A stretch of DNA of 64,000 nt, from positions 7,059,607 to 7,123,606 of the forward strand of contig NW_002060945.1 of assembly GCF_000150275.1 (NCBI RefSeq), read 5' to 3'. Position 1 is the stretch's first letter, and each line of letters begins with the position of its first letter. The position numbers were made by a program, and so were the translations under genes. This document shows positions 6,130-53,600 of this stretch, in pieces. This DNA is from Trichoplax adhaerens. Its lineage: Eukaryota > Animalia > Placozoa. Below the pieces are notes generated by a model. It was not told the DNA's origin. It saw only the letters and a program-made list of their open reading frames with translations, and did not search any database.

Positions 6130-6376
6130 TTACAGTACTGTACCGTACCGCGCCGTGCTGTACCGTGCCGTACTGTACTCTAGCGGACCGGACTGCACCA
6201 TAGTGTATCGGACTCAGACCGTATCAACTCCGAAACAGAAAACTGGTCTACAGTACAGTACAGTACATGTACTGTAGCCTAAGCCTTCTAATCGTTACGC
6301 AACTGTACAGTACTGTACTGTACAGTACGGTACGGTGAGGACGGTGTGGCTATGGTGTGGCCGTACAGTACTGTGT
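6130..6376. repeat. (GTACN)n pentamer-periodic tracts upstream of MTCH
   Basis: TACAGTACTGTACCGTACCGCGCCGTGCTGTACCGTGCCGTACTGTAC (6131-6178) and the opposite-polarity CTGTACAGTACTGTACTGTACAGTACGGTACGGT (~6303-6336). Confidence 0.8.
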
Positions 6377-7889
6377 ACATCAACATTAACTTCTTCAACG
6401 GTGGACAGACAGACGGTCGTCAAGTATTATCCGTATTAAATGAACATACTGACTTTGGGTGAAAGAGGCTAGACTGATGTCATACCGCCTGGCACGTTAT
6501 TACCCGGCTAAAAACCAGAGACTACTCAGCTAAAAATTCTCCCTCAAAAGCCGCAACTAAAACATTTTCCCCTATACTAAAATACACGTTCATTCTTTTA
6601 GTACATTTATTCCAATGGATTAAAGTTATAAAATAGAGTGCTTGATATCCGTATATAGAAAAAGATGATACAGCGAAAAATTCTCCTTCCAATATAAACT
6701 AGGTTACACCTAGTCTCAGCCCGGTGGATTGCATGTGTCAGAATACTCATAACTTAATTATCAGAGTTTGCATTATTACAAAATGTAAATCGAAATCTCA
6801 ATTTATTTTGTTGAAGTTTCAAGATTTGGCGGTAGACGATATTCTTAACTGTAGATGATAAAACTATTATTAAAGTGATCAGTGCTGCTTATATTAAAAG
6901 CCGTCAATAGCAATCTCAATTTATTTCTTTAAATATTGGATGATAGAGATGATACTTGGTCGTATAATTGACTGTAGTGAGTGATGTAGGATAAATCTTG
7001 AACGAAATATGCATACAGTGGTATGGCATAGTGTGCACAGTAATCAAGACAGTTATCTGATCGATACTGTACTTTGATCTAAAACAAAAGCGCAACAACA
7101 GGTAGACGTTTCTTCAAGTTAAGTGCTATACAATCTACAATCGAGCCAGATCTTGTGACTGACTATGCAATAGAAATTCGGAAAATATTCACCTTTTTAT
7201 TCAATTGAACAGTCGCTGTAGCAGATATTTTTAAGCCCTTTTAATATACACTTACAGCGACTGGTACTGAATATATGGTGATAATAGAGTACTGCAAATT
7301 GAATGAAATGCTTGTTGCTCACTTATGGATGGATACAAGCTTTGATTTCCTGTCAGATAATATCGTCATTCTATCAAGAACAATTCTTCATTTTATTCAT
7401 CTTACTCGTACTTTCCAAATTGATATACAGTACGTATGTAAATAAATATCAATGTGACACTCCTGTACAGGCTAATACCAATCTAATGTCAAATGGTGCG
7501 ATTTGAGCATAACAGTATCTTTTGATTATGATCAAATAAAATATATCATACCGCTTGTACCTACTAACTGAGATAATTATAATTAATCAATAGTATCAAT
7601 CTTATACCAAGTCACAAAAGTGTTGCAACCCTAAATTATATTATTTATGTTATAGGCTCATGTATCATAACGCAGAGCATAGAACATATCATTTAGTTCT
7701 TACTAAGATATGCAAAGACACTAGTAGAAAGTACTAGCACAGTAACATCATGCAGTAATTTAATAACAGACAATAGTCGACAATTTATTATAATTATTTC
7801 AGACATAACCAATTCTACTTGTTTATACTTCATGTATAACAAACTCGTAGAAGCGTATACGTTATGTATAAATATGCAGATGTATGTAT

Positions 7890-12737: not shown

Positions 12738-13017
12738 TATACAGTACAGTATATTAGTTACGAGCTCCAAGTATCGGCTAGAATCAGATACAGTATGTAC
12801 TGTACAGTACTGTACATTGTACAACATACGAACAACACTAAAGGGTGGATTACGTCATTTTTGTGGTTGTGTACTGTACTGTACTGTACTGTACTTTTAG
12901 CCTTTTCACTTTCATCTTTGGTCTTCATACTGTAGTTTTTACTGTATCGTACAGTACATTGTACTGTACGAACGATAAATGAGTACTGTACAGTACTGTG
13001 TACTGTACAGTGTACAG
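12738..13017. repeat. (GTACN)n tracts between divergent cyclin B and CREB3L genes
   Basis: For example (GTACT)5 at 12871-12895 and a dense GTACT/GTACA run at 12940-13017. A CRE-like TTACGTCA lies at 12850. Confidence 0.8.
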
Positions 13018-21900: not shown

Positions 21901-24900
21901 TTTTCCAGTGTTATAGCAGCTAACTTAATCAAAGGTGAAAGAGGAGTTTAGTATTCCCTAACATCCGCTTAAATATTTATTCAGCCTCACAGCAGGAGCT
22001 AAGTGGAGACGGTAAGACACCATTTAAACTTGTACACTGTATACCATTATAGAGTACGCATAAAGTAAGATGTTGTATCACCTCGTTAAAAAAACTTGAA
22101 AGGCAGAAGTAAGAATTTTAAGAAAGTAAAATTAAAAACTTTTAAAATCACGGCTTACGAGATCTTATTCGTTACTGATATCTTAGCATGAGTATTGTAA
22201 ACTCTAATAAGCAATATCTCAACTGAGATCCCATTAGTAAACTAGAAGTGCAATAAAAATTTTATGCTATTGCGTATAAAGCGATTGAATGACCAGTTGA
22301 CCACGCTTTTGAAAATTGACTTCCTATTGACAAATACTTAGTTCAGTATATCAAAAGTCAACAACATATTGATCGCATTTCGAGCTATTCTTACACTACA
22401 AATATTTTGCTATTATAGGCTATAAATATATAATACATATATATTCTACCGATGCTGACAGAATCTCTAATTAAAAATTAGAAATTTTATTGCTTTATAT
22501 AGGAACACTACAGCAGTCAAGGTTAAGAGATATCAGCATGCAGGACTGTATAAGTGTACGGGTATATCGACTTATTACGATTAAAGTATTTAATCGCAGA
22601 AAGTCGTAAGCGTAGTTAACAATATGTTTCGGATTAGATTATGCAAGCGTAGCGTCAGTCAAGGTTATGCAGTATAGTTTTCGGAATACGGTAGATCTGT
22701 AACTGCATTACAGCTATTATCATGTCATTTGTATGATCGACACCTTCAAATTGATCAGGCAGACAGCGGCCCAATTAATTCATTTTTTTTATTACAGAAA
22801 GTAACCAGTTTTGTACGTGAGACGTAAGTATGCTAATGGCTAAGCTCAAAGGCCAAGTACTGTATAGAGCGAAACAGTATTCTAAATAAATACGGGTGCA
22901 ATTCATTTGCAATCGACTAATTAGTTGATACATATATATCATCCTGAAAGCATCTAATGCTGCTCATACTGATACTGTATAATGATACATGAAATTTAAA
23001 TAAATAATTTATAATTATAGGAGCATACGTGTATGGAAATTGAAGGTAAACAAATTCAGGTTACTATTTGATCACAAGGTTTGTTATTAACAAGTCACTG
23101 ACGCCTATATATCATCAGTACAAAAATTAAGGGGCATCATTAATGCATAGCTCTCATTCATGCACTACTAAATTATATTGTAGTATGATCACGTAACAGA
23201 GCTGTAATGCATATTCATAACGCAAGGAGTGCACTTACATAGCATGTAAATGTCATTACTGCACTCCCATTGCCGTTTGATGGTGGTGCGATCTATGGTT
23301 ATTGTCATTACACAATACGATAAATCTTTGAAGTCTTTTAATGTACAATGCAAGTGATACTTGCTATTTTATAAAATTATTTCATATTGTATAATTCGGA
23401 GGCATAAAAGCACCATAACCCTGAGACCTCGTTAGTTGTTACTTAGGATTCCAATACACTACTTTTTTTAACACGTAGTCCTGATACCATAAACTGGCGG
23501 ATTACAAATCACATGCTGGGTAATACTGTATGCATACAGTACGTGCAGTAAAGTAAAAGTACATGGAAATGAGCCGCTACTGTATGTACATTGTATGCTG
23601 TCGTAGCGATATCATCAACAACATTCATTTACCTATCAATGGAATTAACTAATGATTAGAAATGTCTGGTGATAATTAATATCGTCGGTTTGGTCGCCAC
23701 TTTGATACGGATAATAACTGTCTCGCCACTGATTAGTTACTGATGATAACTACGGTAGGCGATGATGATAATAATTATAATGCATATAATAATTTTTAAT
23801 CTGAATGAAGAGAATTTTATTACTGCGATGGTCTTTGATCACTCGCAAGTCGAACACTACTGTGCACTGTGCAGGGTGCAGCAAGTCCGTCTTATATATT
23901 ATTTATTTTTTATCTTATATCTTAAAGTCTTGAGTAGTGGTGATACTGTTCTGGTAAAATGGGAAGACCTCTTAGTTTGTTAACCCTTCCGATCTTGTCT
24001 ATTTATTAACTTGACATTTGACATTTTATTTACATTGATTGACGTATTAATAGCCAAAAATGCTGGATTTCAGCCAATCATCATTAAAGTGACGTTAGCT
24101 GAATCGAGGGTTTGGTTTACTGCAATGATGGTATTTTGCAAAGTACAGTACAGTACTGTACAGTATAGCTCACGTGAGACTACTGTACTGTATGATGTAC
24201 ATAATTCCTTAGAGACTAAAACTAAGGGTCTCTAAAATGTACATCATACTGGGTAAGTTAGCACTCCATGTTTTTTTCTGAACCCTATGACCGCACCATA
24301 TTAGATATGATGAGTATGATACAATCCTCAATCAATTAATTATTTATTCATCATTATTATTTATTATAATGCAAGAAAAAGATTTGCCTCTAGCAGACCG
24401 GCATTATTACAGTAAACTATATGGTGCAGGCAAATATAGCATTAAGAATTTATTTATGTACAGTACAGTATTTATTCAAGTCAGTAATTGAGAAGAAAAA
24501 ACGGCATACCACAATTTGTACAATACGTTTCGAACTTCTGCCTTAAAATACGCTGCGGTATACAGGCACTTGACCATATTGTAGCAAGCGATGTAAAAGG
24601 GTCAAATAGCTCCAATTTCCTATCATCATGTAATTTCCCCTAACTACGGATACTCACTGCTGTTCTGATTCAGATTGCTGCAGTTACTAATGCATACAGC
24701 ATATAGTACAGTAGGATTTGTTCAATTCTCTTCTATTCTATTCGAAGAAGTTGCTGATTATTCTTCTGCCAGACTTGAGAATTTTAATTAATTAATTTAC
24801 TTGTTTGTGACATTACAGCAAATAATAATAACAAGTAAGTAGTGACTGCGTTATAATATTATGTACACATCCATATGATTCATTGTATGGCATGCATAAT

Positions 24901-44369: not shown

Positions 44370-47300
44370 TCAACCAATAAAATTCTGCACAATAAGCTCA
44401 ATTGGTCTGCGACAAATTGGGCATTTTTTCCGTCTACGACGTAACTTTTCCGCACAATTGTAACAACAAACTTGATGACCAATACCTTCATTTATATGAA
44501 TAATACTTGCCGATCTCGGCTCAGAAAGGCAAATCATGCACATTCCATCAACAGTACTCAATCTCTTGTTTGACGCCGACTTGTACCTTTTAAGCTGACG
44601 TGATATTTTGCAATGTTTCTTCTTCCGTTGCTCCTTCTTTAATCTATTGTTGCGATTATTACTTCTAACAGGTGAATCAATGTGACTCTCCGAGCCAGAA
44701 CTATCTGATTCTTGCCTTAAACTAAAATCTATACTACTATTGGCAGATGTCGAAAGCTCCAAGTCATCATCTTGAGGTATCAAAGATAACGTACCGTCAT
44801 TGGTATCGTCTACAGCAATATCGTCATCACTAGGTAACCAATTTTCACGTAATTTCCAACAAAATGCACAATTACGAGCAATTGGATTATTTAACTGTTG
44901 GCAATACAAACACTTCCAGTGATCTTTTTCACCAATCTCTGGATCATCATCTCCAATGTTGTCGGCTGAATTTCTTTCATCCTTGATGCTCGATATTACT
45001 TCGACAACATCCGAAGAAGAAGAATTTGAATATCCTGAATTTGGAGCATCGGTTTCACTATCTGTTACTGGTTCCAATTCAAAAGTTGGATAATTAGTGT
45101 CCTCCAATGACCAGTCATTTTCTTCTGGTTCCGAAGCTGTACTGGTCTCATACCCAACGACAGAATCGAGCTGCTGCTGTACTTGAGCTTTTAATTTTTC
45201 TAATACACTAAATAATGTGGGTTTACTACCCTTGGCTACTTCTGTACTATCAGGAATCTCTTCTTTTGTTAATGAATTGTCATAGTGAGCCTGAGAATTC
45301 TGTCTTGATCTCCAGTCAACATTTATGACACTTTGTTCTAAAAAATAAAAAATAATGTCAACAAAATAGCGCTTTCATATCTGTATCTACTGAACAAATA
45401 ATTCTTCAGGTCCAGAATTACTGTATAATAGATAATTCATAAGCGAATTACAAGTTAAGCAAAGTACAGATAAAATTTACATAAAAGTAATTGAGAAGCG
45501 AAACAATAACTGCTTACAACAAGTGTAAAATTGTAAATAAATTCTAAGGATATAAGCATTGTAATTGTGTAACAATAAATACAGGAAGCGTTATAAAACA
45601 TCTAAAGTACTGTATAACAGCAGACAAAGGGTTTTTTCGTAAATTTCAGTAGTCCACATATACAACTTCCAATACAGTAGCTTATATCAAGGCAAATTAA
45701 TAATTATAATACTTGTACTTGTACGATACACAATCATAGCAATGCATTCTGTAACCATTACATAGACTACATAAATTACAAGAATGGCATAAAGCTTAAA
45801 TCAACGCTATACGGTAATATGGAGGGCATAATAAAATTAATCTTGAAATAATGTCTCTCTGTGTATCACTGCTTATCATTATTAAGAGCGCACTACATGA
45901 TCACGAGAATGGATAATGATGATTGCACCTAGTACTGCGATGTTACTTTTTCTGAAAACGCAACAAACTTGAACTACGTGTATAACGTGACTGATTAAAT
46001 TTATTTTCTAGAGTAAAAGCTGCTCTACACTTTGTCTCAATATACCGGCAACATTACTAATCACATAAATTACCGTTCGCAACCGGAACAACCTCTAGAT
46101 GCATTTTTAGTCGATCCCATAAATTGGCTACCGGAAATTGATCACAAGAAAGTAATTTTTCCAAAGGATCTCCTTTACAATCCACATAATCCGCTCTAAG
46201 AGGATTACACAACTTACGGCTAGATATATAATCAATCAGATATTCCATTACCTGCAGATATCAAAATAAGTTATGATTTAATATAATTTTTTTAAAATTC
46301 TATTTAATGATTACTGAAGCATTTTTTATCTGGCTAATCAGTGAATTTACTATTATTCGTCAGCAATTTTATGCAAATTCTGATTTCTTAATCTATTGCC
46401 GTTCAATACACTCGATGTATGATGAATAATATTAAGTAATTAATTGAACCAACTGACCTGTAGAGCTGTAAGTTCTTTACCATTCACATTTTCTGGAGGC
46501 AGAAATTGCATCAATTCGGCATTAGGCTTGACCACCTATAAAAATTGAAAATAGTGTTAAACTTACGAGTACGATACTTACAAAATGAATGAGTTAGAGT
46601 GCAGTTTAAATTTCACATATTAAAGAAGCACAAAGAAATTGGCATTAACATTGATAGTATTGATTTATGCTATCAGTCAAGATATAACAATTGATTAATT
46701 TCGAAGGTGAGGTAAAGCCATGAACTATTAAAATTCTATTTATTACTAGATATGACTGCTAAGACCGTAACCTTCGAATGCAGAATGCTGATATTTATAA
46801 CAGCATATTGAAAATTTTGAATGCCTAATGTAGTCTGAAGTAATGAAAGCCATCCACTATATGTAACGGCGTAGAGCAGCTAAGAGGTCATGCAATAATA
46901 GAATCAATGAATTTTGTAGTCATCCTTGGTTTACACGTATACTCGTGACACTTCTATAATACTCTTAATCATATTCTCTATGATCATTTTCTATTACATA
47001 GTTATCTACTGTACTGTACTGTACAATATCAGGTATTGTTGTTCGGCAAGGAAGGACTTGCGCGAATAACCATACTAATTTGTTGAACCCAAGTCAAGGC
47101 GCATTTACAATGGAGTCGGTGTATGCGATTTATTTTCTTTTTAAGTTTTTCATAATACTATTATTGTCAACTCACTACTTTATCGACATCAATGAGCTTA
47201 TTTCAAATGTTGTCCTGTACCATTCGTAGTTTTCCTACTACTGTATTGAAGGATAGCACTATCAAAAGTTCCAATCTACTGTAGGTGATTGGCTCAAGCT

Positions 47301-47686
47301 GACAGACAGACTCGTGGTCATCTTGACTCTTGGTGCAAATATGCGATATTTATTGCACGGTGACATTAACAATTTTCGAAACTTCTTTCTATCTATGTAA
47401 CAATTTCATTTTCATCAAAGTAAAGGTGTAGAGTACTTACAAGACGGTCACCATTATAACTGAAAGGATCTCTATCAGAAATGACAATGCGATTCTTTTT
47501 TATTTCCTCGTTCAATTCTCTGCTTCCATTATCATCCATCTTCTTGTGAAAATTGTCGTTGCATGGAATCGTTGCACTATCACAACTTGCCATTGGTTGG
47601 TTTCTTGAATTAATTGATTTATCTGTACAGCTTTTCAAGTTAACCGATCCAATACCACTCTGGCTAATTACACCTTTCAATTCCAT
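44370..47686 (-). CDS. MDM2: MDM2/MDM4-family p53 E3 ubiquitin ligase, at least 4 coding exons (47686-47441, ~46535-46458, 46251-46074, 45337-44370)
   Basis: The SWIB/p53-binding domain reads VVKPNAELMQF...QVMEYLIDYISSRKLCNP...VDCKGDPLEKLL. It is followed by an acidic region, a RanBP2-type zinc finger WKCLYCQQLNNPIARNCAFCWKLR, and the MDM-type C2H2C4 RING CMIC...H...GHQVCCYNCAEKLRRRRKKCPICRRPI with a terminal aromatic residue (NFIG*). Confidence 0.95.
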
Positions 47687-48220
47687 CTATCTTGACGTTT
47701 GTAATAACTCTATACGCTAAAAAATAATACGTCCACTCGTCCACAAAACGACACTGTGCAACTTATCTACTCTATCGGTATTTTTCTCTATTCCACTAGT
47801 ATCTAGCTTAACCAGTCTCAATTCGAGATTTTTTTGGTTGAATTTTTATAACATTACTAGAACATCATTCATACTTATAACTTCATTTGCTGCTATCGTC
47901 TCCATCAATTTTAATCCAGCTGTTGAAGCCATCTTGATCAAGGATTTCTTCCCTTTTCTTTCTTTGCTTCCAGCAATTGAATCCAATAATAACTTGGATC
48001 GCAGTGAATTTTATATCAATATGTACCGTATCCAACTAGAATAGGGTACACATTCCAATACAAGTCAATCAGAAAATCAATTTAGGAATTGCTGCTATTT
48101 GGTTCAAATTGTCAATCCGTTTCTATGGAGTTCTGCGTGTAAATGACTCGCTTCCACTTTGAATCCTGTAGCTGGCTTCAGTGGAACTGGTTGATTGCTT
48201 TCGTATACGATTTGATATAT

Positions 48221-48324
48221 CGTACAATACGGTACTGTACGGTACTGTACGGTACTGCACGGTACTGTACGGTATGGTCTGGTTCGGTGTGGTACGGTAC
48301 GGCGCGGTACGGTACAGCACGGTG
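48221..48324. repeat. (GTACG/GTACT)n pentamer tract upstream of MDM2
   Basis: (GGTACTGTAC)-type decamers x4 (one variant) followed by GGTACGGTACGGCGCGGTACGGTACAGCACGG. CCAAT boxes lie at ~48397 and ~48412. Confidence 0.85.
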
Positions 48325-48802
48325 ATCGCCATGGCTAATGACTGTCTGACGATAGCGGGATAGGAGTCAGTCCTAGATAGGACTCTCATTGGGTCGATTG
48401 GTAGAAACCGGCCAATAACAGTACTGTGACTTCAAACTGAGTCAACACTCTATGGAGTAGTAGGAGAACTATCTTGTCCGATCAAGGATAATAACAATCC
48501 ACTTGACTCACGACCATTTTCTATTATTTGCTTATTTTTACACGATTATTTTTTTTTTATTTTTTGTTATACTGTATAACCGTAATAAGAGTAAACACAG
48601 CCAAATTTTATGGAGTGAGTTTACAGCAACTTTTGACTGAGATAATCGATTGAAAGGAAATTAATCCCACCCATCTTCTTGAACCCCTTCACAATTTTAA
48701 TCCATCGACTCACATGATGTCAAATGAGTCTAGAAATATGGATTGCATAATCGGTAGAATCTGAGATGCAACGATATTGCAGGCTAGTTGCCATTCCAAT
48801 AC

Positions 48803-48822
48803 GGGCTTGCACGAGCATGTCT
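48803..48822. promoter_or_regulatory. Candidate p53-family response element upstream of MDM2
   Basis: GGGCTTGCAC+GAGCATGTCT gives two RRRCWWGYYY half-sites with zero spacer and a 19/20 match. Extra imperfect half-sites are at 48781-48790 (AGGCTAGTTG) and 48849-48858 (TTGCTTGTCC). Confidence 0.65.
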
Positions 48823-50635
48823 GCTGGCTATCTATCCTAGTCAACAGATTGCTTGTCCAACATCATTTCCCTGCAAATGCTTACATAGAGATCTTTTCTC
48901 GACAGTTACTGACTGCCCATCGAGCGCTACCCTAGTACAATAGTACACAAGAAGCAAGAAGTATGAGGGAATGGACAGTGAAACAGCAATAGTATGCATC
49001 GCCATTGCACTAGTTTAAGGCGCAAAAGTCCGATGCAAAGCAAAGGTGCCAGCGGAATCTGTACATACCTGCCCGCTGGAAACTGATTTTGATTGGGTAA
49101 AAAAAAAAGCGATGTTATGAGAGGAATTTGTTATTCTCGCGATTCGATTGGTCCATTTTCTTCGCGCATACTCAATGTTGATTCATCACGCAGGCGTCAA
49201 AGAACTACTACAGTACAATACAGTCAAGCGCACAGTACAAGTACTTATGTACTGTACACTGTAAACTGTAAAGTACAGGACAGGTCGGGGGTCTGCTGTT
49301 ATAGAAGAAGATGCCAACTATAAATGGAAGACCTTCAAGTCGGCAATACTGTAGATACCAAGTATCAAAATTTTTTTAATTTTGCTGTGCATCTTCGCTA
49401 ATATGAATCATATTGGTAAATTGCATTTGCAGTTAGAGCTTGAAAGTACGGTGCTGTACACAGTTTAGTGCCGAAACAACTAGAATTTACAAAAGCAGCT
49501 ATGAGCATCTGTAGACTAATACCATGGACTACTAGATGCACCTGTAATGGAGTAGTCCATGGCTTCATGCTAATATTGTACATTTGAAAAGCGACAGGTC
49601 TGCTGTCCGTCTGCTAGACTTCTTCACAGTTTCTCTCAAGTGATTCCTGCCATGGACTACTACAGCAAACCCATACCACGGATGTTACGGATGTAACGCT
49701 GTTAGAATACGCGTATATACAATAATTAGTCTATCGACTACAGAGTTCAGCTGCCGTATTGCCCTAAATGATATCTTTAAATTAAATTCTTCAGAAATTT
49801 ACGGTCTGTCCAACCATTTTACAAGTCACGTCATAATAATCGTCTAATGAACGGCAACCAGAAATGAAAAATAGATACGAGATTACTACAGTATTGACTA
49901 GTACAGCAGTGAATGATTGACAATTTCACAACGAAATCGACATCTGTCCATGGTATACGAGTACAGTACAAGTTGACAAGTAATTTGCAATATCTTCCAC
50001 TCTAAAACTGGTAATTTACCATATTCCTTTATTAATTATACGCATATTAATAATTGCTATTGCGTTGACAGTCAGTCAAATTGAATAAGGATTAGCCTAT
50101 AAACAAATTCATCTATAAGCACTAACTTTTACCCAAACTTGGAATAATTTGTATAAACAGTTACATCCTAATTAGTTTTGTACAAAACTGCAATATAGTT
50201 GAAAATAAAGTCAATTAATTATAATTACATACTTATAATATATATAGTACATTACTGCAGTAGTCACCGTAATATATAGCACAGCAGAAGACGTTCAAAT
50301 GATAGAAAAGTGTGCGTATATAGAATAGTAGCTTACCCAGCCGACATATGCGCATTAGAAATGGCATTTACAAGGTATAAGATTGCTAATGGTAATTTAA
50401 ATGACAATTAAACCTTTCTACAGAAGGATTTACTTACTTTAACAATATCAGATATAAAAGATAGCTGACTCATATGCATTTCATATACTATACGTAGATA
50501 CGACTCCAATCAAAATGATCTAAAATACGAAGTCAATTATTCGTCTGAAACAGTAACGAATAACCGCTGGATAATTAGCTAGAATTATACGTTCATTTTA
50601 AAAGATCAATAGTCGGCATTCTTTTCATGATAGCA

Positions 50636-53600
50636 TTATAATCTCCATGATTTCTTAATAACAGCATAAAAAATATCATCGTCTAGACCAAATGCTAATC
50701 CAATATAGTAAAGTAGAAAATCCTACAGGAAGATATTCAGAAGTTAATAAAAGAGAAAAACAAGCCCTCCATACCCTTACTGTGGAAAGATACAGTAGAC
50801 GTATATGCTGCATTATAATTATTGACAGTACATGTGGCCTGTACTATAGAGATCCTGAAAATATTGTATTACAGCATAGTTATTCTATCAGTATATAGGC
50901 ATCCAAAATATCTAGTTCGATTGATTAAAAGATATTGCGGATTAAAGGCATTCTACTCCGATAGAATACTAAACACCTCCTAAATAAAATTCCGTAAATA
51001 ATGATACCTACCCAAAAGTAAACTCTTCCATGTACTATACTATCACCAAAGGATTCTATAAATTGTACCGCGTCTGTATGTGGCGAAATGTAATCTTCGA
51101 TTGGAGAAAAATCACAATAAAATATAATTATAAAAAAAGTAGCAATATAGCTCAAACTATTAAAAGATCATTTTACTAGTGCACAATAGTATTTGATAGT
51201 AATACATGAATAACATTACAGTACTGCAAAATGCCGAAATAAATAAAATGCATCTATTTCAGCCTATCCTACTTTAATAGGATGCTTTTCTGGTAACTTA
51301 TTCTAATTTTATACTGTCACTTCATACTTATTTTGCACAATACTGTTGTTTTTATTAGATACTTTAATTTCATTGATTTACTGTCTATTAAATGTAAGAC
51401 CTGATTAATCTGTAATCTTACCTGGTATATTTGTTAACATATTAGTCGGAAAGGTATAAAATTTCTTGATTTCAAATATATTAACGACACCTTGCTTGCT
51501 TGAATCTAGTTTCCGGAAAGCCTACAATTGCAAAATTAGAAGGAAGAAATAATTTAAATTCAAAATTACCTTATTAATAACTGTGCCATTTTTTCAATGC
51601 TTATTCTTAATTAACTTACTAGTGTATAGTAAGATCTTTTTTATCAAATTTACTTGATCTAACATTAGATAATAAGATCTCATTGCCATATGATTGAAAA
51701 CTTTCAATTATATTCCTTTCATTTAAAAAAACTGTCTTTGAATAGCCTAAGCTACTATACCGTCAAAAGCATAAACTTCCTCGGCATAGCCCTTAGTATA
51801 CATGCCGGCTAAAATTTACTGAATATGAATAACATTATTACCGCTTGCTGCAACTTTACATTTTATACTGAAATATTATTCTTAAAAATGTATATATCGG
51901 CATATGCATAAATTTTGATACAGCTAATGCTTTAATATACGTATATGCAAATATGTACCACTGAAATTGCATAAGTAGAACAGGTTATAGGAGTGTATTT
52001 AGCAACTAACTAACTCTATAATTTCATACCTTTCGTATCAATGAATGTTTAGCCTCTCCAATTTCACCAACCAATAGTTGCATGAAAAAGGAATAATCTG
52101 CGTGGGTGCTTTTCTCTATATCTACTTCATACCATAAAATCTCAAAATCCTAACAAAATTAATATTTGGATATTTCTTGTTACATGTATTGATATTTGAT
52201 ATATTAAAAATAATGAATATTCTCTTCTCAGTTCCATTCAACATCATCTCATTATTGTAATTGTAAGTTATCCTAAAAAGTCTATTCGCTTATAGCTACG
52301 CAGCGGTATGAGAATGTATTCGATAAGCGAACCTTGTCGGTGATATCTATGTGATATCGCTTCAGAGCAAGTTTAAATTGATTTTTGTCTAAAGTGGAAG
52401 TAGATTGGCGATCTAGAGTTCTTAGATACTGTCCCAACCCAATTACAGTCTTGATGCCTCGTCGTTTTATTTCTTTCCGAATGCTGTCTTTAATTTTAAA
52501 TTACAAAAGTAAGCATACGAGTAAGTTCAGATGTAAATTACCTTCGAGGATAATAAATTACAAAATGGATAAATAAGTCTATTATGATTATGAGTACCAC
52601 ACTGGATCATAAAATATACAATTTCGAATCATTTACGTCATAAAATTTCCTTTACAGATATACTAAGATATTTTACCTTGAATTGCTAGTAAATTAGCAG
52701 CATGAATATCATTTTCTACATCCTCTTTTACACTTTCTTTAACACTGTAACGTACCAAAATTTAAAGATATCGTAGTTAAAATACACATAACGTGCACCT
52801 CAGATTATTCCATTTCTCTTACGTTATCAACTACGGCAATAACTTTAATCTTATGTAAAAAATTTTATGATACGTGATATAAAGAATAGCAATTAGAAAT
52901 ATATACAAGTCGATACTCACAGAGCCGCATCTCTGGCATCCTCATCTACATTTGTAATTCGAAGGATTAAAAACTTTTTGGCTGATAAAGACTTTGGCAG
53001 TGTTGTTTTATTATTGGTTTCAAAAATTAAATTATTTCCCTAAATTAAATCAATATAAAATGTGTATGAAAGTCAATACCAGTTTTAGTTTTAGAAGTTA
53101 TATCCTTTCACTTCATGTCAATTGCATTCAATGAAGACTTAATATCGAACCCCTCTCTAACATCGATGTCAGCCTACTCTTAGAAGCCAAACAAGTAAAG
53201 TGATACACTTGAGATATCCTCTTGCAGTACATAATTAAATGCCCGTACCCAATACGATATAAAATATAAACGAGAAAAACTTGTGGCATTCTCCGTATGT
53301 GCACGCATTTTCTCACCGTTTGAATATCTTGTAAAGATATCCTTTTGCCCTGCTTTAATCCATAGAAATGGTTGTAGATATCACGTTGAATTAACGGTAA
53401 CGCTGTTGATCTATACATATTATTCATTGTTATATAAGTTTTTTAGAAGATGCACCTTCAAGTGCTCAGTTAGCATAGTAGCTATTGGCTGTTAACATAA
53501 GTAATATTTCATATAAACGTAAAAGCCACACTTAGTCTTAAATGTGGCCATACACCACTTCCAAGCGATCACAACTAGACTTTACCTGCTTCCGATTTGA

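What the first reader, a model, noticed from the sequence alone, without database searches (positions are those of the whole stretch)
47846..49280. p53 response element placed in a P1/P2-like two-promoter architecture upstream of MDM2
Seen: a 19/20 zero-spacer p53 consensus site (48803-48822) with extra half-sites at 48781 and 48849. A strong minus-strand donor CAG|GTATGT lies at 49069/49068, below a promoter-like zone (CCAAT at ~49091 and ~49146, E2F-like TTCGCGC at 49161, GTACA tracts 49207-49277). A second promoter-like zone (CCAAT x2, pentamer tract) is at 48221-48420, with a plausible acceptor CCCTATTCTAG at ~48036. Known: vertebrate MDM2 has a constitutive P1, a non-coding exon 1, and p53 sites in intron 1 driving P2; placozoan p53 and MDM2 proteins are already described. 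Inference: the transcriptional arm of the p53-MDM2 negative-feedback loop, with the same layout, may exist in this early-branching animal. A rough estimate at ~32% GC gives ~4e-7 per position for such a match, about 1e-3 within 2 kb of MDM2.
Basis: partly seen in the sequence, partly recalled or inferred. Interest (0 to 1): 0.88.

Follow-up and report, generated by a model that had tools for sequence, protein, structure and literature searches.

The report
Candidate p53 site upstream of placozoan MDM2
A near-perfect p53 binding motif lies 1.2 kb upstream of the Trichoplax MDM2 gene and is the best candidate so far for the DNA switch behind its known radiation induction, but the idea was published in 2016 with weaker sites and the proposed two-promoter layout is untested.

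Summary
The motif is real. GGGCTTGCACGAGCATGTCT (48803-48822) matches the p53 consensus at 19 of 20 positions with no spacer. Half-sites flank it at 48781 (9/10) and 48849 (8/10). It is the only match with one mismatch or fewer in the window, and the surrounding DNA is unique in the genome. Genome-wide density is 1.2e-6 per bp, about 2-3e-3 for the roughly 2 kb upstream of MDM2.

The genome is Trichoplax adhaerens. MDM2 (TRIADDRAFT_54791) starts at ATG 47593, or at the in-frame ATG 47686.

Two papers temper the novelty. Siau 2016 proposed p53 elements upstream of TaMdm2 and showed that Tap53 binds them and a consensus site. Those elements map to 48047-48276, match 15/20 or worse, and two lie in the common (ACAGT)n repeat. 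Fortunato 2021 showed MDM2 rises 12-20 fold after X-rays. The 19/20 site lies just outside the roughly 1 kb that Siau appears to have scanned, so it is a new and better candidate.

The P1/P2 layout rests on motifs only. No RNA evidence and no other placozoan's promoter could be obtained.

Side lead: 17-18/20 sites lie about 0.5 kb upstream of Ku70, Ku80 and LIG4.

The parts
48803..48822 (.). p53-type response element: two decamers, zero spacer, 19/20 to RRRCWWGYYY x2 (GGGCTTGCAC GAGCATGTCT)
   Evidence: It is the only match with one mismatch or fewer in the window. Genome-wide density is 1.2e-6 per bp. The surrounding 500 bp is single-copy in the genome.
48781..48790 (.). extra half-site AGGCTAGTTG (9/10, core intact), 12 bp from the full site
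48849..48858 (.). extra half-site TTGCTTGTCC (8/10, core intact), 26 bp from the full site
48047..48074 (-). published putative element TXRe540 of Siau et al. 2016; best match to the p53 consensus is 15/20; bound about 30-fold over control by Tap53 in vitro
   Evidence: exact match to the published oligonucleotide; consensus match; binding from PMC5039725
48221..48320 (.). (ACAGT)n / GTACN pentamer tract, the known promoter-proximal microsatellite; it contains the published TXRe350 (48229-48254) and TXRe320 (48248-48276), each 14/20 or worse to the p53 consensus
   Evidence: genome-wide 7632 hits against 0 for the control; PMC2871265
48388..48444 (-). proximal promoter-like cluster: three CCAAT boxes (48388, 48397, 48412) and a TGACTCA AP-1-type heptamer (48438-48444); motif level only
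   Evidence: local GC 0.44 against about 0.30 in the flanks
49061..49071 (-). candidate splice donor CAG|GTATGT (last exon base 49069, GT at 49068-49067); usage untested
   Evidence: top-scoring donor on the minus strand in 47400-49450
49092..49277 (-). distal promoter-like zone: CCAAT at 49092 and 49147, TTCGCGC at 49161, degenerate ACAGT tract at 49207-49277; motif level only
47441..47716 (-). MDM2 first coding exon. Annotated ATG at 47593 (MASCDSAT...). In-frame upstream ATG at 47686, directly preceded by a stop. Donor CTT|GTAAGT, with 47441 the last exon base. Strong candidate acceptor (T-rich tract, then TAG) with first exon base 47716.
   Evidence: the start matches the cloning primer of PMC5039725
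44370..46535 (-). rest of the MDM2 coding region: SWIB exons 46535-46458 and 46251-46074, further exons, and a last exon ending at 44370 with the RanBP2-type and RING fingers
   Evidence: Pfam SWIB 5e-4 and zf-C3HC4_3 1e-11; the NCBI model P0003 (458 aa) maps onto these exons

Best explanation
The 20-bp element at 48803-48822, with its flanking half-sites, is most likely a real binding site for the single Trichoplax p53-family protein (Tap53). It would contribute to the rapid induction of MDM2 after DNA damage. That would make it the cis-acting part of a p53-MDM2 negative feedback loop that predates bilaterians.

Proposed mechanism. After damage, Tap53 is stabilised post-translationally, since its mRNA does not change. 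A tetramer binds the two abutting decamers and raises transcription of MDM2 on the minus strand. MDM2 protein then targets Tap53 for degradation.

Favoured layout. The site acts as an upstream element about 0.4-0.5 kb distal to a proximal promoter. That promoter would be marked by the CCAAT triple and the (ACAGT)n tract at 48221-48444. The site would work alongside the weaker published element TXRe540, not from inside an intron between two promoters.

Shown: the motif, its rarity, its position, the gene model, and (from papers) Tap53 binding to consensus DNA and MDM2 induction.

Inferred: binding to this particular site, its effect on transcription, and the position of the transcription start.
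For: Motif and rarity:
- 19/20 match, zero spacer, both cores intact.
- Genome-wide density of 1.2e-6 per bp gives about 2-3e-3 for the roughly 2 kb upstream of the single MDM2 gene.
- A 9/10 half-site lies 12 bp away.
- The DNA is single-copy, shows no coding signal and no RNA family.
- It lies in a GC-raised island at 48000-49500.

The factor:
- The genome holds one p53 locus. The equivalents of human R248, R273, A276, C277 and R280 are kept.
- Tap53 binds a consensus element in vitro (PMC5039725).

The target:
- MDM2 rises 20-fold by RNA-seq and 12-fold by qPCR two hours after X-rays, with TP53 mRNA flat (PMC8635375).

Independent hint that such sites are in use:
- In 1.5 kb upstream of seven damage-response genes there are 3 sites with two mismatches or fewer, against 0.23 expected. 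There are 7 with three or fewer, against 2.3 expected. The genome-wide density for two mismatches or fewer is 1.8e-5 per bp.

Layout:
- (ACAGT)n tracts lie 550-750 bp upstream of the ATG in MDM2, Ku80, LIG4, RAD52, p53 and a POLQ/HELQ-like helicase.
- That repeat is known to lie upstream of genes (PMC2871265).
Against: - No binding, reporter, chromatin or transcript data exist for this site.
- Genome-wide, p53-consensus matches barely exceed a composition-matched control: 128 against 107, and 1903 against 1734. Most such matches are therefore chance.
- Conservation in other placozoans could not be examined. The only other placozoan contig stops inside the gene.
- Tap53 did not transactivate in human cells, and it bound a 15/20 site well. 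Its preference may differ from the human consensus.
- The sites near Ku70, Ku80 and LIG4, and TXRe540, lie 450-610 bp from the ATG. This site lies at 1210 bp.
- The enrichment test was set up after seeing the hits and covers only seven genes.
Confidence: 0.5

Rival explanations
1. Chance match. The 20-mer is one of about 100 background consensus matches in this genome and happens to lie near MDM2. Radiation induction of MDM2 would then run through other elements, such as TXRe540, or through other factors.
For: The reversed control pattern gives 107 sites against 128 real ones. 8 of 100 window shuffles give a match. The site is farther from the ATG than the p53-like sites near Ku70, Ku80 and LIG4.
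Against: For the one MDM2 gene in the genome the expectation in 2 kb is only 2-3e-3. A 9/10 half-site is adjacent. MDM2 is the classical p53 target and is strongly radiation-induced here.
Confidence: 0.27
2. A constitutive distal promoter (49092-49277) makes a short non-coding exon ending at 49069. The p53 element lies in intron 1 and drives an inducible internal promoter near 48221-48444, as in vertebrate MDM2 P1/P2.
For: CAG|GTATGT at 49068 is the best donor in 2 kb. A strong acceptor at 47717/47716 would give a 5' UTR whose only ATG is the in-frame 47686. Two separate ACAGT-type tracts and two CCAAT groups lie upstream of the gene. The upstream neighbour appears co-oriented (calcyphosin-like exon at 52500-52285 on the minus strand), so the distal zone need not belong to a divergent gene.
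Against: CCAAT pairs are common, with 20 in 64 kb. The distal tract is degenerate. The two CCAAT boxes lie only 23 and 78 bp upstream of the donor, which leaves almost no room for a start site and an exon downstream of them. The 3' end of the upstream gene was not located, so the distal zone could be its terminator region.
Confidence: 0.2
3. The palindromic element is bound by another factor, or serves another transcript such as the upstream calcyphosin-like gene or an unannotated RNA, and does not regulate MDM2.
For: The neighbouring gene ends somewhere between 52.0 and 49.4 kb. A low-copy repeated 12-14-mer sits at 49522-49664.
Against: There is no ORF with family support and no Rfam match between 47.0 and 50.5 kb. 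The motif fits p53 at 19/20, and MDM2 is the nearest 5' end.
Confidence: 0.03

Closest known systems
Putative p53 response elements TXRe540, TXRe320 and TXRe350 upstream of TaMdm2 (Siau et al. 2016, Sci Rep, PMC5039725)
   Same: Same gene, same upstream region and same proposed role, as evidence for a p53-Mdm2 feedback loop in Trichoplax. All three map inside the finding's span, at 48047-48276.
   Different: They match the consensus at 15/20 or worse. Two of them lie in the ubiquitous (ACAGT)n repeat. The 19/20 site lies 1210 bp from the ATG. It sits about 200 bp beyond the roughly 1 kb they appear to have scanned. That limit is my inference from their numbering. The site is not mentioned in the paper.
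Vertebrate MDM2 P2 promoter with two p53 response elements in intron 1 (Barak 1993 and later work; from general knowledge)
   Same: A p53-type element 5' of the MDM2 coding sequence of a damage-inducible MDM2 gene, with more than one candidate element. Both share the half-site ending CATGTCT, which I recall from the human RE2.
   Different: In vertebrates the P1 and P2 start sites, the non-coding exon 1 and the intronic position are shown experimentally. Here none of these is shown, and the favoured reading is a plain upstream element.
Radiation-induced, p53-dependent genes of Drosophila, including ku70 and ku80 (PMC6724604)
   Same: An invertebrate p53 that drives DNA-repair genes after irradiation. 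In Trichoplax, 17-18/20 p53-type sites lie about 0.5 kb upstream of Ku70, Ku80 and LIG4.
   Different: Flies have no MDM2. In Trichoplax the dependence on p53 is untested.

Membership tests
Canonical p53 response element | Two RRRCWWGYYY decamers separated by 0-13 bp | tested here: met
   19/20 match with zero spacer
Canonical p53 response element | Intact C4 and G7 of both CWWG cores | tested here: met
   The cores are CTTG and CATG. The single mismatch is at flank position 9 of the first decamer.
Canonical p53 response element | Rarer than background at the locus | tested here: met
   Genome-wide density is 1.2e-6 per bp, so about 2-3e-3 in 2 kb. The genome as a whole shows little excess over the control (128 against 107).
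Canonical p53 response element | Bound by the cognate p53 protein | not testable with these tools
   Published only for a consensus site and for TXRe540, TXRe320 and TXRe350 (PMC5039725), not for this 20-mer. The DNA-contact residues of Tap53 are kept.
Canonical p53 response element | The linked gene is induced by p53 activation or DNA damage | not testable with these tools
   Published: MDM2 rises 12-20 fold after X-rays (PMC8635375). Dependence on p53 is not shown.
Canonical p53 response element | Conserved in related species | tested here: inconclusive
   The only other placozoan contig (L001, 2708 bp) begins at the first SWIB-domain exon, inside the gene. Exon 1 has no retrievable homologue. 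A metagenome scan found nothing.
Vertebrate-type MDM2 P1/P2 two-promoter architecture | A non-coding first exon transcribed from a distal promoter and spliced to the first coding exon | not testable with these tools
   A good donor at 49068 and acceptors at 47717 and 48036 exist as sequence.
Vertebrate-type MDM2 P1/P2 two-promoter architecture | p53 elements inside intron 1, immediately upstream of an internal inducible start site | not testable with these tools
   The position is compatible: the site lies 246 bp past the donor and about 390 bp upstream of the CCAAT triple. No start site is mapped.
Vertebrate-type MDM2 P1/P2 two-promoter architecture | Two promoter regions distinguishable from background | tested here: inconclusive
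   Two ACAGT-type tracts and two CCAAT groups are present. CCAAT pairs are common (20 in 64 kb) and ACAGT tracts are generic.

The most novel reading that the evidence does not exclude
The transcriptional arm of the p53-MDM2 loop, with a vertebrate-like layout (non-coding exon 1, p53 element in intron 1, inducible internal promoter), already existed in the common ancestor of placozoans and bilaterians. The same Tap53 element type would also drive the end-joining genes Ku70, Ku80 and LIG4, defining an ancestral p53 regulon of MDM2 plus double-strand-break repair.
Probability: 0.15. Interest if true: 0.75.

Novelty: new member of a known kind. Interest (0 to 1): 0.42.

Why it matters
Whether MDM2 was already a direct transcriptional target of p53 in early animals is still open. 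The published Trichoplax evidence rests on weak sites, two of them inside a ubiquitous repeat, and on induction data with no cis element attached.

A 19/20 zero-spacer site just outside the region examined before gives experimenters one concrete 20-mer to test. The tests are binding, reporter activity and occupancy. It could link the 2016 binding work to the 2021 radiation-induction result.

If the sites upstream of Ku70, Ku80 and LIG4 hold up, they would suggest that p53 control of end-joining repair, known in flies, is ancestral.

Tried and rejected
Start sites and splicing remain untested.
- Transcript contigs by protein look-up. The NCBI MDM2 model P0003 is not on record in the contig index. 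The 489-aa model that would start at ATG 47686 is a joined sequence, so I did not build or search it.
- Conservation. A search with the last exon found one other placozoan contig, L001 (68-70% amino-acid identity). It begins at the first SWIB-domain exon. L002 is only 694 bp. The exon-1 ORF found no homologue by either protein search. A JGI metagenome scan found none.
- Coding or RNA gene under the site. No Pfam hit for five local ORFs. Only sub-threshold miRNA-model hits on the pentamer tract.
- Repeat or transposon origin of the site. 48600-49100 is single-copy in the genome.
- Pentamer tracts as specific promoter evidence or as p53 elements. Rejected, because they are the known (ACAGT)n microsatellite.
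- CCAAT pairs as promoter evidence. Common in the window.
Rejected.
- 3' end of the upstream gene. An exon at 52500-52285 resembles calcyphosin (E = 0.002). A guessed last exon at 49797-49925 had no support, and Pfam found nothing in ten ORFs.
- The two perfect 20/20 sites in the genome. One lies in the first intron of a POLQ/HELQ-like helicase and one about 1 kb upstream of a serine carboxypeptidase. This is suggestive for the first only and was not pursued.
Full report
**What is in the sequence**

The 20-mer at 48803-48822 reads GGGCTTGCAC GAGCATGTCT. Against RRRCWWGYYY twice it has one mismatch, an A at position 9 of the first decamer. There is no spacer and both CWWG cores are intact. Further half-sites with intact cores lie at 48781 (AGGCTAGTTG, 9/10), 48849 (TTGCTTGTCC, 8/10) and 49007 (9/10). 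It is the only match with one mismatch or fewer in the 64-kb window, and 8 of 100 dinucleotide shuffles give one.

The window lies in a 105.6-Mb assembly of 1414 contigs. That assembly holds 128 such sites against 107 for the reversed control pattern. The 500 bp around the site is single-copy. It has no ORF with Pfam support and no Rfam match. It lies in a GC-raised island of 0.38-0.44, against about 0.30 in the flanks.

**The gene**

MDM2 is on the minus strand. The last exon, ending at 44370, carries the RING finger (Pfam 1e-11). A SWIB exon lies at 46251-46074. The NCBI protein TRIADDRAFT_54791 of Trichoplax adhaerens (P0003, 458 aa) maps onto exons 47593-47441, 46535-46458, 46251-46074 and onward.

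Its start, MASCDSAT, equals the cloning primer of Siau et al.. An in-frame ATG at 47686 is directly preceded by a stop. The p53 site is therefore 1210 bp upstream of the annotated ATG and 1117 bp upstream of the earlier one.

**What was already published**

*Siau et al. [quoted passage not shown] Tap53 bound all three and a consensus element in vitro, with TXRe540 about 30-fold over control. They read this as evidence for the feedback loop. Tap53 did not transactivate in human H1299 cells.
- Their oligonucleotides map exactly to 48047-48074 (TXRe540), 48248-48276 (TXRe320) and 48229-48254 (TXRe350).
- These match the consensus at 15/20 or worse.
- Their numbers 320, 350 and 540 fit distances from a point near 48600, which is 1 kb upstream of the ATG. 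I infer that they scanned about 1 kb, which would put 48803 just outside it.
- TXRe320 and TXRe350 lie in the GTACN pentamer tract. That tract is the (ACAGT)n microsatellite, with 7632 hits genome-wide against 0 for the control. It was described in 2010 as the dominant microsatellite, with 54% of copies within 1 kb upstream of genes (PMC2871265). Earlier notes of this scan say the same.

*Fortunato et al. 2021 (PMC8635375).* MDM2 (TriadG54791) rose 20-fold by RNA-seq and 12-fold by qPCR two hours after X-rays. TP53 mRNA did not change.

So the concept and the induction are both known. The specific 19/20 element is not mentioned in the papers I could search.

**The factor**

The genome has one p53-family locus. 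Its DNA-binding exons keep the equivalents of human R248, R273, A276, C277 and R280, while R283 is a serine. This fits the reported binding to a consensus element.

**The two-promoter idea**

CAG|GTATGT at 49068 is the top donor on the minus strand in 2 kb. CCAAT boxes lie at 49092 and 49147 and at 48388, 48397 and 48412. TTCGCGC is at 49161 and GTAC-rich tracts are in both zones.

Several points weaken the reading:
- CCAAT pairs within 70 bp occur 20 times in the window, and the pentamer tracts are generic.
- The two distal CCAAT boxes lie only 23 and 78 bp upstream of the donor. That leaves little room for a start site and an exon downstream of them.
- An exon starting at the proposed acceptor (48036) would carry seven upstream ATGs.
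- A stronger acceptor, with first exon base 47716, would leave only the in-frame ATG at 47686.

The upstream neighbour appears to be co-oriented. An exon at 52500-52285 on the minus strand resembles calcyphosin (E = 0.002). Its 3' end was not found.

(ACAGT)n tracts lie 550-750 bp upstream of the ATG in MDM2, Ku80, LIG4, RAD52, p53 and a helicase gene. This makes 48221-48444 look like the ordinary promoter region of MDM2, with the p53 site about 0.4-0.5 kb further upstream. None of this decides where transcription starts.

**What could not be done**

The joined spliced protein models were not built or searched.

The only other placozoan contig (L001, Logan run SRR30664517, 68-70% amino-acid identity) begins at the first SWIB-domain exon. 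Exon 1 has no detectable homologue. A metagenome scan found nothing. Conservation of the site is therefore unknown.

No contig that I took for human was met.

**A side test**

I asked whether p53-type sites accompany other radiation-response genes. I located RAD52, two Ku genes, three ligases, a BRCT-bearing PolX (taken as pol lambda) and p53 itself in the genome. I then fetched 10 kb around each.
- Ku70: an 18/20 site lies 473 bp upstream of the ATG, and a 17/20 site lies 755 bp upstream.
- Ku80: an 18/20 site (GGGCATGTCA ACACTTGCCC) and a 17/20 site lie 560-610 bp upstream.
- LIG4: two 17/20 sites lie 470-570 bp upstream, next to its ACAGT tract.
- RAD52, pol lambda and p53 have none upstream. 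Two other ligase loci, whose start codons I did not map, have none at a plausible upstream distance.

In the seven 1.5-kb upstream regions, MDM2 included, the counts were as follows:

| Sites | Observed | Expected (first-order Markov model) |
|---|---|---|
| Two mismatches or fewer | 3 | 0.23 |
| Three mismatches or fewer | 7 | 2.3 |

Three control patterns gave 3 each at three mismatches or fewer. The genome-wide density for two mismatches or fewer is 1.8e-5 per bp (1903 sites against 1734 for the control). Without MDM2, that means 2 observed against about 0.16 expected in 9 kb.

The test was framed after seeing the hits and the sample is small, so it is a lead only. It matches Drosophila, where ku70 and ku80 are radiation-induced in a p53-dependent way (PMC6724604).

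The two perfect 20/20 sites in the genome lie in the first intron of a POLQ/HELQ-like helicase and about 1 kb upstream of a serine carboxypeptidase.

**Verdict**

It does not hold for the promoter-like features. My odds are:

| Reading | Odds |
|---|---|
| Real Tap53 element in a plain upstream position | 0.50 |
| Real Tap53 element in an intron between two promoters | 0.20 |
| Chance match | 0.27 |
| Serves another factor or transcript | 0.03 |

It is a new and better candidate inside a system that has already been proposed and partly tested. I class it as a new member of a known kind, of moderate interest.

Noticed in passing
L009:7285-7304 and 7567-7586 (Ku70, ATG 6812 minus); L010:3901-3950 (Ku80, ATG about 4510 plus); L011:4436-4535 (LIG4, ATG 3966 minus): p53-type zero-spacer decamer pairs (17-18/20, all cores intact) lie 470-775 bp upstream of the start codons of the three core end-joining genes. 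Ku70 and LIG4 are among the published X-ray-induced genes. In seven 1.5-kb upstream regions there are 3 sites with two mismatches or fewer, against 0.23 expected.
   Followed up: partly
window 48221-48320, 49207-49277, 47011-47024, 6135-6333, 12797-12996, 24143-24161; also loci L007, L008, L010, L011 and L015: (ACAGT)n / GTACN pentamer tracts lie at a fairly regular 550-750 bp upstream of the ATG in MDM2, Ku80, LIG4, RAD52, p53 and a helicase gene. The repeat itself is known (Wang 2010). I did not find the regular distance to the start codon stated.
   Followed up: partly
L007:5981-6000 (G000:C1410:6398180-6398199): One of only two perfect 20/20 p53 consensus sites in the genome. It lies in what looks like the first intron of a POLQ/HELQ-like helicase gene, a DNA-repair gene. 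ACAGT tracts lie upstream of that gene.
   Followed up: partly
L006:5997-6016 (G000:C1409:3454396-3454415): The other perfect 20/20 site lies about 1 kb upstream of a serine carboxypeptidase (cathepsin A-like) gene.
   Followed up: no
window 49522-49664: Three copies of the 12-mer CCATGGACTACT, two direct and one inverted, within 140 bp. The 14-mer GGAGTAGTCCATGG occurs 8 times in the genome against 0 for the control. This may be a low-copy repeated element or a terminal-repeat remnant between the upstream gene and MDM2.
   Followed up: partly
window 52285-52500 (minus), perhaps also 52027-52149: An exon resembling the N-terminal EF-hand region of calcyphosin (PDB 3e3r, E = 0.002). This indicates a co-oriented gene directly upstream of MDM2. 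Its remaining exons and its 3' end were not found.
   Followed up: partly
window 47594-47686 (minus): An in-frame ATG 31 codons upstream of the annotated MDM2 start, directly preceded by a stop and 30 bp downstream of a strong acceptor-like site (first exon base 47716). The real protein may be 489 aa and not 458 aa.
   Followed up: no
L014, upstream of the pol lambda-like gene (ATG 3786): A perfect 20/20 match to the reversed control pattern YYYGWWCRRR x2. I did not look at its sequence; it may reflect GTAC-rich promoter tracts inflating that control.
   Followed up: no
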